Made by a program: the position numbers and the translations under genes
Notes under the pieces: generated by a model
What the model was told of the DNA's origin: nothing
Seen by the model: the letters and a program-made list of their open reading frames with translations, nothing else
Database searches by the model: none
Shown here: one piece after another, positions 55,462-63,305 of the stretch
How the letters are laid out: every line of letters begins with the position of its first letter
Position numbering within the stretch: the stretch's first letter is position 1
Source of the DNA: Octopus bimaculoides
Taxonomy: Eukaryota
Assembly: GCF_001194135.2 (NCBI RefSeq)
Contig: NC_068984.1
Location: forward strand, 30,361,518-30,425,160
DNA: 63,643 nt
Direction of reading: 5' to 3'

Positions 55462-56000
55462 AAGCAATGTTAAATCTCTGAACGAGGTACTAACAGTAAC
55501 TGCACGACAAGGTGAAGTATATTTGCCACTTAAATGTGGCTGACCCCTAAGGGTGGATGTTAGTGTTGCTTTTAGCCCCAGGAGAACATCTCCTCCAGCT
55601 GGCTATTGACACACATCTGTGTCCTGTCTGTATTTGCAAAGGGAAGTCATCCTTCCCATCTTGATCTGCGATACGTACGGACTCGAGTTTCTAGGTATTT
55701 ACCTGTCCTCAGCATACGACAATCACGACCTTCGATGCGAAAGATTTCCCTTTGCAAATACTTATATCTTTTTCCAGTGAAATTATTCACTGATCTCGGA
55801 AAAGTGAAAACAAGCAATGTTAAATCTCTGAACGAGGTATTAACAGTAACCGCACGACAACGTGAAGTATATTTGCCACTTAGATGTGGCTGAGCCCTAT
55901 GGGTGGATGTTACTGTTGCTTTTAGCCCCAGGAGAACATCTCCTCCAGCTGGCTATTGACAAACATCTGTGTCCTGTCTGTATTTGAAAAGGGAAGTCAT
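55462..56000 (-). mobile_element. Retrozyme-like tandem repeat, 350-bp period, 1.5 copies visible (variant A)
   Basis: 55462-55650 repeats at 55812-56000 with about 9 differences in 189 bp. It abuts the N gap on the left and (TA)n on the right. Confidence 0.85.
55674..55718 (-). ncRNA. Type I minimal hammerhead ribozyme (variant A)
   Basis: cgtatg-CTGAGGA-C-AGGT-aaat-ACCT-A-GAAAC-TCGA-GTC-cgtacg: palindromic stem III ACTCGAGT, GUC triplet (cut after 55680). Stem I extends to the 16-bp stem 55630-55645/55746-55761. Confidence 0.85.
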
Positions 56001-59640: not shown

Positions 59641-61971
59641 AGCAATAGCTGTCTTACTATTGAGGTAATATTTGGGTATCTCAGTTGGACAAGGAAGAAG
59701 AGGCAGGTAGGAAAAAGTTAGAAATAGTAAGGCAGTCAGAGCAAGAGAGAGAAATAGATGGTAGTGGAGATGTGTTGAGGCCTATTCATAGGGAACAATA
59801 GGGCTGAGTGTAAGTAGTACAGGGGGAGAGAGGAGGATGTTCTGCTCTCACATATTTGCCGTAACCTGCTCCTATCCACTCCAATTTCTCCCAACATCAC
59901 TTGCTACACACACACGCACACACGCATGCACGCACACACACACACACACACACACACGTACACACACACACACAGTGCACACACACGTACACACACCCAT
60001 ACATACACACACCCATACACACACCCATACACACACCCACACCCACCCACACACCCACACCCACACTCACACACACCCACACACATTATGTTGCTAATCC
60101 TCTGAAAATCCATTTTATTCTCTAGAAATCTCTTAAATGATAAAAATATTTTTAATGGCTGCTCTCTAATAAAGTAATGTAAATTAAAAATTGTAAACAA
60201 TATTGCTGTCAACATATTTATGAGAAATATAATTTTTTTAACTTGTAACACGATCTGTATTCTCTGAATGTAATAGCTTTCATGAAAAATGAAAGCTGGT
60301 TAAATGAATCTTGCCAATGGTTTATCATTTTAACATGTCCCATTAGATACACTTAAAATACCAAAGAAGTATAAAACCTCATGGAGAAAGATGTGGATGA
60401 CAATTAACCATCCTGTGTAAGAATATGTCTATTTAAGAAGTGAAATTCATTTGGTGTAGTGGAATCAAAATTGTTTGTATTTCAAAAATCACAAGTCACA
60501 AACCAAATTGAAATGGTTAAAAAAGATGCATAGTCCAGTGATTTAGAGTGTTGACCTAACAATAAAACTATGGCTTTGATTTCTGTACAAGTACCTTGCT
60601 TAAGGACATGGTACCCTTGAGCAAGATACTTCATTTCATGTTGCCCCAGTCTATTCAACTGAAATAAGTGTTATCTCCTCTCTCCCTTTAGTTGTCACAT
60701 CCTTGGTATTTTGCTGGGTCAAAGGTAATGGTTCAAAGAGCATGGCTATCTACTCATAATTACATACCCATTTGAAACAATTATCAATAGTTGCAGGTCA
60801 TACTCAATTGCAGATAAATGATGGCTTTGACATTGTTTTTTTTTAAACAAGTTGAATTGATATAGCTAAGAACTGGCATCATTCATATACATAAAGCACA
60901 AAATTACTAAGCATCTGTAGATTTTGTTTATTGCTTTAACAATATTCTAAGACTGCAAGTATTGCAAAATGCTGTGAAGTATCCTCTGAATTGAGCTTGT
61001 AATGCAATTTTAGTTCTCCGACGAAGCAATCCATTTAAATTAGCTTACTTCTGAGATAATTGTCATTTTTTTTAGCTCTTAACTTCAGCTGATTAAGTGA
61101 ACAAAATGAATGGCTACCTCTACAAAGAGGGAACGATTTATATTCTTTCATCACTGCTGAGCAATAGTCACTTTCCAGACATGTAAACTTTAATATTTTA
61201 ACCAATTTACTAATAACTAAGTGCTACGAGATGGTACAGCTGAACTTTGTAAACAGAAAGATTGGTCTAAGATTGGAGAGTAAATCTTGATCATGAAATG
61301 TTAATCTCATATCTTGCCAATCATGGTCAACTTGGGGAAGTACTCTCTTTAAGTTAGTATGATTAATGATTTATAGCTGGGGGCATCTGATTAGAAGGAG
61401 AAGGGTAGGACATTTTATTTATCAAATATACATGCGAAAATAGAAAATTTACATTCACAGACCAAATGCTGGGTAATTATCATTATTCACAGATTGGATC
61501 CCATGCTGGTAGCATGCAAAAAGCACCATTCAAGTGTGATTATTGCCAGCATCGCCTTAATGTGAAAATAGAAGAAATGTAATATCTGAGAAATCCACAC
61601 ATAGAACTGTGCTGACAAGTTATTCCAGAAATAAGGAGAAGGAAAGCCCATAATGTCATAAGGTCACTGTATTTCATTCAGAAGAAAAGAAAGATATCTC
61701 AAGATTTTGGAATATTTTCCTTTGTTGAAATAGACTGAAAGAAGAAAAAAGAAAAAGCATTAAAAAAAAGAGAAAAGAAAAATGTATGTGTGTTATCAAA
61801 CCAGCATGGCTGAAGATTGAAATTGTGAATAATAATAAGATTAACAGTAAATAAAAGTAATAAAGCTAAAAAATATTTTCTACACATACACACATGTATG
61901 TATGTGTATATGTATGTATGTATGTATAATTTCTGAGGATGTGCATAGAGTAGTGAGGTGAGAATCCAAAA

Positions 61972-62638
61972 AATAATGTAACTATTCACTCTTAATATTT
62001 TCTAACAGATTCAACCGGGAATAACTGACTGCTGTTGTTTGCATCATTGGAAAGCACTTCCTTCCCTTAGATGATATGATTCACATGTATTTCAATGGTG
62101 TAAGAGGATTTTGGGACACCATGGTGTTTTGCTCTGATTATGTGTTTCCGCAGACAAAGTTTCCTTACTGGACCAATGAATGTAACAAGAGGGTGAGCTC
62201 TTGTTTATAGATATTAGCAAATAAAGTTCTTGCTGATGTGGTCAGATATTTATAGTTGAATCTGCTAGAATATATTAAAAATGATTAAATAATTTATTGC
62301 TTGGATTCATACTGTTCTACAGGCATCCCATGATTTATTATCAGTTTGGAAGACATCAGCATGCATCAGAAAATAATTTGTTTATTGATTTTTATTAAAC
62401 AAAGAACTTATACTCTTGTTTGATTCATTGGGTTTGCCGGGTATCTTTGGGTGAGAAGACACACAACAAGGTCAAAATACTGCAATGTATTAAAGTCTCC
62501 TTACACCAGTGAGTCAAGTGTATTACGAATGTATATCAGCAATAGGAAGAGGTGTTTTCCAATGACGAAGAACAACACTGATCAGACATTCCTGTTTAAA
62601 TCTGCCAGAATGCATTAAGAATAACTAGATACATTATT
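61972..62638. repeat. 667-bp imperfect palindrome centred near 62291
   Basis: Outer 68 bp match 50/68 without gaps. A further ~105 bp (62096-62200 vs about 62405-62508) aligns without gaps at about 63%. The centre is AAATAATTT. Confidence 0.9.
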
Positions 62639-62649
62639 GTAATAACACA

Positions 62650-62960
62650 CAGACATATACATACATACACATACACACATATGTATATATATGTACATAC
62701 ACATACACACATATGTATATATATGTACATACACATACACACATATGTATATATATGTACATACACACATATGTATATATATGTACATACACNNNNNNNN
62801 NNTATATATATGTACATACACACATATGTATATATATGTACATACACATACTCACATATGTATATATATGTACATACACATACACACATATGTATATATA
62901 TGTACATACACATACACACATATGTATATATATATGTACATATACACACACACATATATA
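62650..62960. repeat. About 26-bp compound minisatellite (ACATACACACATATGTATATATATGT)
   Basis: Directly visible, with a small internal gap. Confidence 0.9.
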
Positions 62961-63305
62961 TGAGTATTTGGCCTCACGAAGGCAAAGTGGCTGAGTTCCT
63001 TTCAGGTGTTTGGCCACATGGGAGCAAAGTGGCCAAGTTCCTTTCGAGTATTGGGCCTCATGGAAGCAATGATCGAGACCTTTGGCATTATATAGTGCTT
63101 TGGAAGAAGACTCATCAGATACCGGTGTCACACAAATGGTGCCATGCTAGTGGCATGTAAAAGCACCCATTACACTCTCAGAGTGGTTGGCATTAAGAAA
63201 GGCAAATCAGACTGGAGTCAGGTGTAGCCTTCCAGCATGCCACCCCAGTCAAACAATCCAACCCATGCCAGCATGGACAACAGACGTTAAATAATGATGA
63301 TGATG
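62960..63305 (+). mobile_element. RTE LINE 3' end (ORF2 terminus plus 3'UTR) with an internal ~42-bp tandem duplication
   Basis: ...GGCCTCA(C/T)G(A/G)A(G/A)GCAA... is repeated, then RDLWHY-type codons, the family 3'UTR and a (GAT)n tail follow. Confidence 0.7.

What the first reader, a model, noticed from the sequence alone, without database searches (positions are those of the whole stretch)
61972..62638. 667-bp ancient, nearly loop-less palindrome with long gap-free arms
Seen: arms pair from the outer AATAATGTA/TACATTATT inwards to about 62291. Identity is about 74% over the outer 68 bp and about 63% over a further ~105 bp, both without indels, and most mismatches are transitions (G-U or A-C in the fold, with no clear strand bias in my count). 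No TE homology was recognised. Retention of register despite 25-40% substitution is unusual for neutral DNA. Inference: it is a hairpin-RNA (endo-siRNA) locus, an ADAR hyper-editing substrate or an old foldback element.
Basis: partly seen in the sequence, partly recalled or inferred. Interest (0 to 1): 0.7.

Follow-up and report, generated by a model that had tools for sequence, protein, structure and literature searches.

The report
Inverted pair of old ribozyme-bearing retroelement copies
The "palindrome" is two decayed, oppositely oriented copies of a common ~338-bp octopus repeat that once carried a hammerhead ribozyme, joined head to head in the way Penelope-like retroelements typically insert, so it is ordinary repeat debris and not a dedicated hairpin-RNA gene.

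Summary
An inverted repeat is present at 61972-62638, but it is not gap-free, not loop-less and not unique. Ungapped identity is 73.5% over the outer 68 bp, then 27%. With six indels the arms (61972-62238 and 62364-62638) align at 70% around a ~125-nt centre.

Both arms belong to a dispersed family: at least 1885 first-look candidates genome-wide, 338-bp unit, about 19% diverged from its consensus. The arms resemble each other (67.8%) no more than unlinked copies do (70.2 +/- 3.9%). The transition excess is family-wide (ts/tv 2.35, CpG decay).

Across 45 loci the family shows the Penelope-like-element (PLE) insertion signature:
- partial tandem units and variable 5' truncation;
- two discrete 3' ends about 42 bp apart (the "tail");
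- a head-to-head inverted partner at 17-18 loci, tail-to-tail at none.

The consensus holds a complete type I hammerhead ribozyme. One copy scores 31.3 bits against Rfam Hammerhead_1 (cut-off 34). Both window remnants carry core mutations.

Best reading: an old composite insertion (61926-62638) of a non-autonomous, retrozyme-like element mobilised by PLE machinery. The RNA would fold into a long hairpin (z = -8.9), but nothing indicates selection for that. No autonomous partner and no target-site duplications were found.

The parts
61894..61927 (.). (ATGT)n microsatellite directly abutting the left end of the composite insertion
   Evidence: TRF, (period 4, 8.5 copies). Sequence read.
61926..61971 (-). 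'Tail' extension of the left arm. It is the reverse complement of unit positions about 1-47 and ends ...GAAATTAT, close to the canonical tail end ...GAATTAT.
   Evidence: Alignment to the family consensus. Strict local alignment supports only the first 14 nt, so the remainder is decayed and the outer limit is approximate.
61972..62249 (-). Left arm: an inverted, 5'-truncated family copy covering unit positions 338 down to 55, 76% identical to the consensus
   Evidence: nhmmer E = 7e-53..
62108..62162 (-). Decayed hammerhead remnant of the left arm. The core reads CTGCGGA (A6 to C) and AAAAC (G12 to A).
   Evidence: Family alignment; coordinates.
62238..62298 (+). Partial upstream unit (positions about 279-338) preceding the full unit. 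This is a pseudo-LTR-like partial tandem, and it explains why this stretch also pairs with 61962-62029.
   Evidence: (pair I7), (nhmmer 62238-62291).
62299..62638 (+). Right arm: a full-length family unit (positions 1-338/339), 81-82% identical to the consensus, ending at the canonical 3' end ...GATACATTATT
   Evidence: nhmmer E = 1.5e-91..
62443..62496 (+). Decayed hammerhead remnant of the right arm. The core reads GTGAGAA (C3 to G, G8 to A) and AAAAT (G12 to A).
   Evidence: Family alignment; coordinates.
62645..62961 (.). Complex (ACAT/AC/AT)n microsatellite to the right of the insertion. It contains a run of N at about 62794-62803.
   Evidence: TRF. Sequence read.

Best explanation
Window 61926-62638 is one old composite insertion of a non-coding, non-autonomous retroelement family. 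The family has a 338-bp unit, 41% G+C and thousands of copies. Its master copies carried a type I hammerhead ribozyme, which makes it a metazoan 'non-LTR retrozyme'-like repeat. It was inserted by Penelope-like-element (PLE) machinery.

Published in vitro work on a PLE protein shows that it cleaves and extends both DNA strands and starts reverse transcription at two nearby sites in the RNA. On a multimeric or tandem template this would give three features. A 5'-truncated copy longer than one unit forms on one strand: the right arm, with a partial unit plus a full unit. An inverted 5'-truncated copy forms on the other strand: the left arm, with its 'tail'. The two variable 5' ends are joined in the middle and the canonical 3' ends face outward.

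Since insertion (roughly 0.2 substitutions per site ago) both arms have decayed neutrally, mainly by transitions at former CpG sites, to about 68-70% mutual identity, and both ribozyme cores have been destroyed.

Shown here: family membership, the family's architecture, the hammerhead motif in the consensus, and the neutral level of divergence. Inferred: mobilisation by a PLE enzyme, origin of both arms in a single event, and former ribozyme activity.
For: Family membership
- The 667-bp query gives 76 matches from 410 candidates.
- The unit consensus gives 80 matches from 1885 candidates, at 73-85% identity.

Architecture across 45 distinct loci
- Copies are typically a partial unit (starting around position 230-290) followed by a full unit.
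- Several loci hold 2-3.3-unit tandems.
- There are two discrete 3' ends: at position 338 (...ATACATTATT), or 40-44 nt further on (...CATGAATTAT).
- 17 loci have an abutting inverted partner and one more has a partner 250 bp away. All 18 are head to head and none is tail to tail (binomial p about 4e-6).

Match to published PLE features
- Pseudo-LTR, 5' truncation, an adjacent inverted 5'-truncated copy and a 30-40-bp tail are described for PLEs (PMC8557442, read).
- The PLE protein cleaves and extends both strands, and the two RT start sites define the tail (PMC11167929).

Hammerhead
- Consensus positions 144-196, sense strand only, read: helix I GCTTTGA/TCAAAGT, core CTGAGGA, helix II GAC/GTC, GAA, helix III ACAC-TGCA-GTGT, cleavage triplet GTC.
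- A looser descriptor matches 5 of 200,000 shuffled units.
- Rfam Hammerhead_1 is the only family hit on copy L052 (15.7 bits, full model).
- It scores 31.3 bits on L080. L080 is a family member by nhmmer, E = 1.3e-27.

Fit to retrozyme descriptions
- Unit size, 41% G+C and a self-paired fold (z about -3.2 to -3.7, 65% paired) fit non-LTR retrozymes (PMC7229834).

Genome background
- PF01541 (GIY-YIG) gives 2261 candidates, of which 112 of 150 scored are hits.
- RF00163 gives 186,549 first-look candidates.

Neutral decay
- Arm-to-arm identity of 67.8% is at the 25th percentile of unlinked pairs.
- Family ts/tv is 2.35, G>A and C>T dominate, and 13 columns look like ancestral CpG.
- The JC distance of 0.22 matches the PLE expansion at JC 0.2 reported for Octopus vulgaris (PMC13282606).

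Co-insertion
- Inverted partners share derived variants more often than random pairs. Four of 8 pairs lie above the 90th percentile.
Against: - No autonomous PLE sharing the family's 3' end was found. All 24 flanks downstream of GIY-YIG hits gave no match, though many were partly masked with N.
- No target-site duplications are detectable.
- The microsatellite insertion bias described for some PLEs is absent in this family: 6.7% of flanks against a 7.6% background.
- No individual copy reaches the Rfam gathering score of 34 bits.
- Helix II of the candidate ribozyme is only 3 bp with a 10-nt loop.
- The thermodynamic MFE of the consensus prefers an alternative GAGACAC/GTGTCTC stem.
- For this locus the shared-variant signal is only at the 88th percentile, so two successive insertions cannot be excluded.
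- The proportion of inverted pairs may be inflated, because the genome search favours loci with more seed matches.
Confidence: 0.8

Rival explanations
1. Two independent insertions of the same family landed next to each other in opposite orientation, by chance or because the element's endonuclease prefers its own sequence as a target. On this view the palindrome is not the product of one event.
For: - Arm-to-arm identity is no higher than for unlinked copies, and shared derived variants are only at the 88th percentile.
- The left arm is more diverged from the consensus (76%) than the right arm (81%).
- PLE endonucleases are reported to recognise their own pLTR/tail sequence (PMC11167929).
Against: - The 18 head-to-head versus 0 tail-to-tail count shows a directional mechanism, not chance adjacency.
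- Across loci, inverted partners share derived variants more often than expected.
- The literature treats the inverted 5'-truncated copy as part of the insertion unit (PMC8557442).
Confidence: 0.12
2. The structure is a foldback or MITE-type DNA transposon with long terminal inverted repeats made of tandem subrepeats, moved by a transposase.
For: - The outer ends are inverted copies of the same sequence (AATAATGTA...TACATTATT).
- The arms contain tandem subunits.
- Many copies are dispersed through the genome.
Against: - No TSD signal above background was found.
- 27 of 45 loci are single-orientation copies with the same canonical ends.
- Inner junction positions vary from locus to locus.
- There are two alternative 3' ends about 42 bp apart.
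- The hammerhead motif occurs on one strand only.
Confidence: 0.04
3. The inverted repeat is maintained as a functional hairpin-RNA source, acting as an endo-siRNA precursor or an ADAR hyper-editing substrate.
For: - The 716-nt RNA would fold into a long imperfect hairpin (z = -8.9).
- About 77-79% of arm positions pair when G-U is allowed.
- Cephalopods edit RNA extensively (general knowledge, not tested here).
Against: - The arms decay at the family's neutral rate.
- The transition bias is the family-wide spectrum, with no strand bias.
- There is no Rfam match in the region.
- The same geometry occurs at about 40% of sampled family loci as a by-product of insertion.
Confidence: 0.04

Closest known systems
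Metazoan non-LTR retrozymes (Cervera & de la Pena 2020, PMC7229834; Li, Clavereau & Pollet 2026 preprint, 10.64898/2026.07.22.740005)
   Same: - Non-coding tandem-capable repeat with a 338-bp unit, within the reported 150-450 bp range.
- Low G+C (41%).
- One type I hammerhead per unit, on the sense strand.
- A self-paired predicted RNA.
- It co-occurs with abundant PLEs, and the proposed mobilisation is by PLE machinery.
   Different: - Most copies here are 1.2-1.4 units carrying a single, decayed ribozyme, not long multimers.
- The family is old (about 19% divergence) and no intact copy was seen.
- circRNA expression and self-cleavage were not tested.
- Helix II is short (3 bp).
- No cephalopod example was found in the searched literature.
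Penelope-like element insertion architecture: pseudo-LTR, inverted 5'-truncated copy and 30-40-bp tail (Craig et al. 2021, PMC8557442; Frangieh et al. 2024, PMC11167929)
   Same: - Partial tandems.
- Variable 5' truncation.
- A head-to-head inverted partner abutting the 5' end.
- An optional 40-44-bp tail defined by two alternative 3' ends.
- A hammerhead motif in the repeated part.
   Different: - The element has no ORF (no RT, no GIY-YIG), so it is non-autonomous.
- No similarity to an autonomous PLE 3' end was found in 24 sampled flanks.
- No microsatellite insertion bias was detected.
Foldback elements and MITEs
   Same: Terminal inverted repeats several hundred bp long, partly built from subrepeats, with many dispersed copies.
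   Different: No TSDs, predominantly single-arm copies, variable inner junctions, and features of reverse transcription (5' truncation, discrete 3' starts).
LINE-1 5' inversions by twin priming
   Same: An inverted 5' segment joined to a direct 3' segment within a single retro-insertion, at a frequency of tens of percent.
   Different: In twin priming the outer end of the inverted segment is an internal RNA position. Here both outer ends are the element's canonical 3' ends. There is also no poly(A) tail and no LINE-type tail.
Inverted TE pairs as dsRNA sources (inverted Alu pairs edited by ADAR; Drosophila hpRNA loci)
   Same: Two oppositely oriented repeat copies that could form a long imperfect RNA duplex if co-transcribed.
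   Different: No evidence of transcription, editing or small RNAs, and no sign of selection on pairing.

Membership tests
Metazoan non-LTR retrozyme | Type I hammerhead ribozyme motif in each unit | tested here: met
   The consensus at positions 144-196 has all core nucleotides and three helices. A looser descriptor matches by chance in 5 of 200,000 shuffles. Rfam Hammerhead_1 aligns over the full model at that position in two copies, scoring 31.3 and 15.7 bits, both below the gathering score of 34.
Metazoan non-LTR retrozyme | Short tandem repeats of about 150-450 bp with low G+C and no ORF | tested here: met
   The unit is 338-339 bp with 40.7% G+C. Tandems of 2-3.3 units occur at L009, L020, L027, L039, L044, L051 and L057. 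Most copies, however, are only 1.2-1.4 units long.
Metazoan non-LTR retrozyme | Self-cleavage and expression as small circular RNAs | not testable with these tools
   This needs in vitro transcription and RNA data such as RNase R treatment or northern blots. Here only a self-paired predicted fold is available (z about -3.2 to -3.7).
PLE-type (Penelope-like) insertion | Partial tandem (pseudo-LTR) with variable 5' truncation | tested here: met
   Upstream partial units start anywhere from position about 125 to 290, followed by a full unit.
PLE-type (Penelope-like) insertion | Inverted 5'-truncated copy abutting the 5' end | tested here: met
   17 of 45 loci have an abutting partner and one more has a partner 250 bp away. 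All are head to head and none is tail to tail. The window locus is one of them.
PLE-type (Penelope-like) insertion | Optional 30-40-bp 'tail' from two RT start sites | tested here: met
   3' ends fall either at position 338 or 39-44 nt further on. The script scored 14 of 52 arms as tailed, 10 of them ending at 39-44. About 8 further tails were recognised by eye in the flanks printed by the same call. The window's left arm carries a decayed tail.
PLE-type (Penelope-like) insertion | Sequence similarity of the non-autonomous element's 3' end to an autonomous RT + GIY-YIG element | tested here: inconclusive
   There were no nhmmer hits in 24 flanks downstream of GIY-YIG matches, and many of those flanks were partly withheld as N. 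The genome holds at least 2261 GIY-YIG candidates, so the sample is tiny.
PLE-type (Penelope-like) insertion | Microsatellite insertion bias (reported for Naiad/Chlamys PLEs) | tested here: not met
   6 of 89 flanks are simple-repeat-like, against a 7.6% background (p = 0.67). The microsatellites flanking the window copy therefore carry no weight.
Foldback element / MITE | Terminal inverted repeats flanked by target-site duplications | tested here: not met
   Best flank matches are no better than for mismatched locus pairs (mean 7.07 against 7.00). The copies are old and their boundaries fuzzy, so the test is weak.
SINE (pol III head, LINE-type tail) | A tRNA-, 5S- or 7SL-derived 5' head and a poly(A) or LINE-derived 3' tail | tested here: not met
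   No tRNA, 5S or 7SL match appeared in permissive Rfam scans of the window element and five loci. There is no poly(A), and the copies end at ...ATTATT(GT) or ...GAATTAT.
Hairpin-RNA / endo-siRNA locus | Arms conserved above the neutral level, or with compensatory changes | tested here: not met
   Arm-to-arm identity is 67.8%, against 70.2 +/- 3.9% for unlinked copies.
Hairpin-RNA / endo-siRNA locus | Small RNAs or A-to-I clusters mapping to the arms | not testable with these tools

The most novel reading that the evidence does not exclude
Because PLE-type insertion primes on both DNA strands, a large fraction of this family's insertions (about 40% of sampled loci) are born as long inverted repeats. 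In a PLE-rich octopus genome such composite insertions could be a systematic, genome-wide source of long dsRNA hairpins that feed ADAR hyper-editing or endo-siRNA pathways, with this locus as one example. Separately, the family would be the first cephalopod retrozyme-like repeat described. Its insertion signatures (tail, inverted partner) would be direct structural evidence that animal retrozymes are mobilised by PLE enzymes.
Probability: 0.15. Interest if true: 0.55.

Novelty: new member of a known kind. Interest (0 to 1): 0.28.

Why it matters
For the scan, this removes a candidate. The palindrome is a by-product of a known insertion mechanism acting on a common repeat, and it decays neutrally.

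For repeat biology there are two modest gains. First, it documents an octopus repeat family that has a canonical type I hammerhead in its consensus together with every structural hallmark of PLE insertion. That links 'non-LTR retrozymes' to PLE machinery through insertion signatures, not only through co-occurrence. Second, it warns that long 'ancient palindromes' in PLE-rich invertebrate genomes should be checked against this architecture before they are read as hairpin-RNA genes.

Tried and rejected
- **Hammerhead at CTCCGATGACGAAAAAC (unit position about 268).** Rejected. The hairpin lies before the GATGA box, not between the core boxes, so it is a false lead.
- **TRIM or small LTR retrotransposon (terminal direct repeats plus an internal region).** Considered because positions about 230-338 recur at both ends and as solo pieces. 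Rejected because the 5' starts vary, there are no TG...CA ends and no convincing primer-binding site, and the extra 40-44-nt tail does not fit.
- **SINE with twin priming.** Rejected. Both outer ends are canonical 3' ends, there is no pol III head and no A-tail.
- **Rfam scans of the window element and five loci.** Only sub-threshold miRNA-like hits in the flanking microsatellites, and no hammerhead. The window copies are too decayed. The motif appeared only in the consensus and in better-preserved copies.
- **TSD search.** No signal.
- **Microsatellite target bias.** None for the family, despite the suggestive flanks in the window.
- **Autonomous partner.** 24 flanks downstream of GIY-YIG matches gave no similarity. 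Many of these stretches are withheld as N.
- **Coding context.** Ten of the longest stop-to-stop frames in the window have no Pfam match, and no Rfam family reaches gathering score anywhere in the window. Whether the locus is intronic or intergenic remains unknown.
- **Cross-species conservation.** No other cephalopod genome is reachable with these tools.

Full report
**1. The observation**

Reading 61700-62900 and an inverted-repeat scan confirm arms 61972-62039 and 62571-62638: 68 nt, 74% complementary and ungapped. The same scan shows that 61962-62029 also pairs with 62241-62308. This was the first sign that the right half holds a repeated terminal segment.

In the fixed palindromic register, identity is 73.5% over the outer 68 bp. 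It then falls to 26.7% over the next 105 bp, which is chance level.

A gapped local alignment recovers pairing between 61972-62238 and the reverse complement of 62364-62638. It gives 186 matches in 266 columns (69.9%) with six gap events, and scores 178 against 29 +/- 4 for shuffles. About 125 nt in the centre have no partner in that register.

As RNA, 61926-62641 folds to -218 kcal/mol, against -163 +/- 6 for shuffles (z = -8.9). The inverted repeat is real and far beyond chance, but it is neither gap-free nor loop-less.

**2. Both arms belong to a dispersed repeat family**

The window is G000:C4:30361518-30425160 in a 2.34-Gb genome. The 667-bp query matched 76 places at 65-84% identity, from 410 first-look candidates of which only 40 were scored. 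The matches cover query 268-667 on one strand and query 1-267 on the other. So 62239-62638 is one family copy and 61972-62238 is an inverted, truncated one.

An alignment of 24 copies gave a 338-339-bp unit, GTTTGGATTC...GATACATTATT. Searching with its consensus raised the first-look count to 1885, with scored copies at 69-93% identity (full-length copies 73-85%). These counts are lower bounds. The window's right arm is 81-82% identical to the consensus and the left arm 76%.

**3. The arms have decayed neutrally**

Over 276 aligned positions the arms are 67.8% identical. This is the 25th percentile of 1790 pairs of copies taken from different loci (mean 70.2%, sd 3.9).

Arm mismatches are 55 transitions and 34 transversions. 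Family-wide ts/tv against the consensus is 2.35, G>A and C>T dominate, and 13 columns show the CG/TG/CA mixture typical of decayed CpG. Counting G-U, 77-79% of positions pair on either strand, so there is no strand bias.

Mean divergence is 0.19 (JC 0.22). That equals the Penelope-like/LINE expansion at JC 0.2, about 56 My, reported for Octopus vulgaris (PMC13282606).

**4. Anatomy of the family**

A profile HMM of the unit was run over 45 distinct loci with 1.5-kb flanks. It shows the following.
- **Partial tandems.** Most copies are a partial unit starting at about position 230-290, followed by a full unit 1-338. Some loci hold 2-3.3 units (L009, L020, L027, L039, L044, L051, L057).
- **Ends.** 5' ends are variable, while 3' ends fall at two discrete places: at position 338 (...ATACATTATT, often followed by G or GT), or 39-44 nt further on (...CATGAATTAT). 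The script scored 14 of 52 terminal arms as tailed, and several more tails are visible by eye in the same output.
- **Inverted partners.** 17 loci have an oppositely oriented copy abutting the 5' end, and one more has such a copy 250 bp away. In all 18 the 5' ends face each other and the canonical 3' ends point outward. No locus shows the opposite, tail-to-tail order (binomial p about 4e-6).

The window locus fits this pattern exactly. On the minus strand, the left arm runs tail 47->1 (61926-61971) and then unit positions 338->55 (61972-62249). On the plus strand, the right arm runs 279->338 (62238-62298) and then 1->338 (62299-62638).

Adjacent units, including inverted partners, share non-consensus variants more often than random pairs do. 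Four of 8 inverted pairs lie above the 90th percentile; the window pair is at the 88th.

**5. A hammerhead ribozyme in the consensus**

Positions 144-196 of the consensus read GCTTTGA-CTGAGGA-GAC(N10)GTC-GAA-ACAC-TGCA-GTGT-C-TCAAAGT. This is a complete type I hammerhead with:
- a 7-bp helix I, extendable through a UA bulge to GGGG/CCCC and a further 11 bp;
- the CUGANGA and GAA boxes;
- a 3-bp helix II and a 4-bp helix III closed by a tetraloop;
- a GUC cleavage triplet.

It occurs on the sense strand only. A looser descriptor matched 5 of 200,000 shuffled units on either strand. CG/TG/CA variation among copies suggests the ancestral helix III loop held CpGs.

Independent support comes from Rfam.
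- In a 161-nt slice of copy L052, the only hit among 4227 families was Hammerhead_1. It covered the full model at the predicted place, at 15.7 bits.
- A genome-wide RF00163 search returned, among its scored hits, C11:73295420-73295466 (L080) at 31.3 bits, with a local E-value of 2e-6.
- The family HMM then identified L080 as a family member, E = 1.3e-27.

No copy reaches the gathering score of 34. The two window remnants (62443-62496 on the plus strand and 62108-62162 on the minus strand) carry core mutations (C3, G8, G12; A6, G12). This is why direct Rfam scans of the window found nothing.

The unit consensus is 40.7% G+C. It folds better than shuffles (z = -3.7 linear and -3.2 circular, 65% paired).

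**6. Comparison with what is known**

Craig et al. 2021 (PMC8557442) describe PLE insertions as follows:
- highly 5'-truncated;
- organised in partial tandems that form pseudo-LTRs;
- with an optional 30-40-bp tail;
- with hammerhead motifs in the pLTRs of canonical clades.

Frangieh et al. 2024 (PMC11167929) show in vitro that a PLE protein cleaves and extends both DNA strands. They also show that reverse transcription starts at two adjacent internal sites, whose spacing corresponds to the genomic tail.

Cervera & de la Pena 2020 (PMC7229834) define metazoan non-LTR retrozymes as low-GC tandem repeats of about 150-450 bp carrying type I hammerheads. A 2026 preprint argues they are non-autonomous PLE derivatives.

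The family here meets all the sequence-level criteria of both descriptions. The genome is also rich in GIY-YIG domains (2261 candidates, 112 of 150 scored are hits) and in minimal PLE-type hammerheads.

Some features were not met or not shown:
- no microsatellite bias;
- no TSDs;
- no autonomous partner among 24 sampled flanks, many of them masked;
- no activity or expression data.

A full-text search combining octopus, hammerhead ribozyme and Penelope turned up no paper in the held library that describes such a family in an octopus.

**7. Verdict**

The finding is an old composite insertion of a retrozyme-like, PLE-mobilised repeat. The palindrome is a by-product of the insertion mechanism and has since decayed neutrally.

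The hairpin-RNA and ADAR readings are not supported, although transcription cannot be tested here. The 'old foldback element' reading is right in spirit but names the wrong class.

Interest in the locus itself is low. The family is a modestly useful new member of a known kind.

Noticed in passing
G000 genome-wide; examples L062, L070, L075, L078 (around position 1500 of each locus): The genome holds very many minimal PLE-type hammerheads of the form GTACCTGAAGAGACCCAGAACAGGTCGAAACATGTGTTGTAC. The RF00163 search gave 186,549 first-look candidates, and 11 of 74 scored hits were above the gathering score. Several sit next to (TA)n or (TGTA)n runs.
   Followed up: partly
L061, L064, L068, L069, L079 (about 1500-1610 of each): These are Hammerhead_1 hits about 105 nt long with a large insertion inside the model. 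They share a conserved sequence (TTTTGTACAACG.TCGTTTCGACC...CTGGGTCTCGTCAGGTAC on the strand shown), so they form a second, distinct hammerhead-bearing repeat family.
   Followed up: no
L017:923-1070, L020:2800-2948, L027:2845-2994, L002:2435-2541: Recurrent sub-threshold 'SCARNA7' matches (18-32 bits against a gathering score of 65) appear in the unrelated flanks of four loci. They probably mark another abundant dispersed repeat and not real scaRNA genes.
   Followed up: no
window 62655-62961 and 62794-62803: A complex 32-bp-period array built from (ACAT), (AC) and (AT) motifs (10 copies, 79% matches) lies here. It is interrupted by a short run of N, which is an assembly gap inside the simple repeat.
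   Followed up: no
window 62963-63069: A 42-bp tandem repeat (2.5 copies, 76% matches; unit AGTATTGGGCCACATGGAAGCAAAGTGGCCAAGTTCCTTTCA) lies just beyond the microsatellite.
   Followed up: no
window 55910-55947 (-): A weak 38-nt fragment matches unit positions 245-282 of the same family (E = 0.008). It may be a solo remnant or chance.
   Followed up: no
window 1-63643: The window has 34% G+C and 2326 N. Many multi-frame 'ORFs' are caused by simple repeats. None of the ten long frames tested has a Pfam match, and no Rfam family reaches gathering score. The window therefore appears to be repeat-rich non-coding DNA.
   Followed up: partly
family 3' ends (loci): Both alternative 3' termini lie at an ATTAT motif...ACATTATT(GT) and ...GAATTAT(TA). 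This suggests the two reverse-transcription start sites share a short sequence cue.
   Followed up: no
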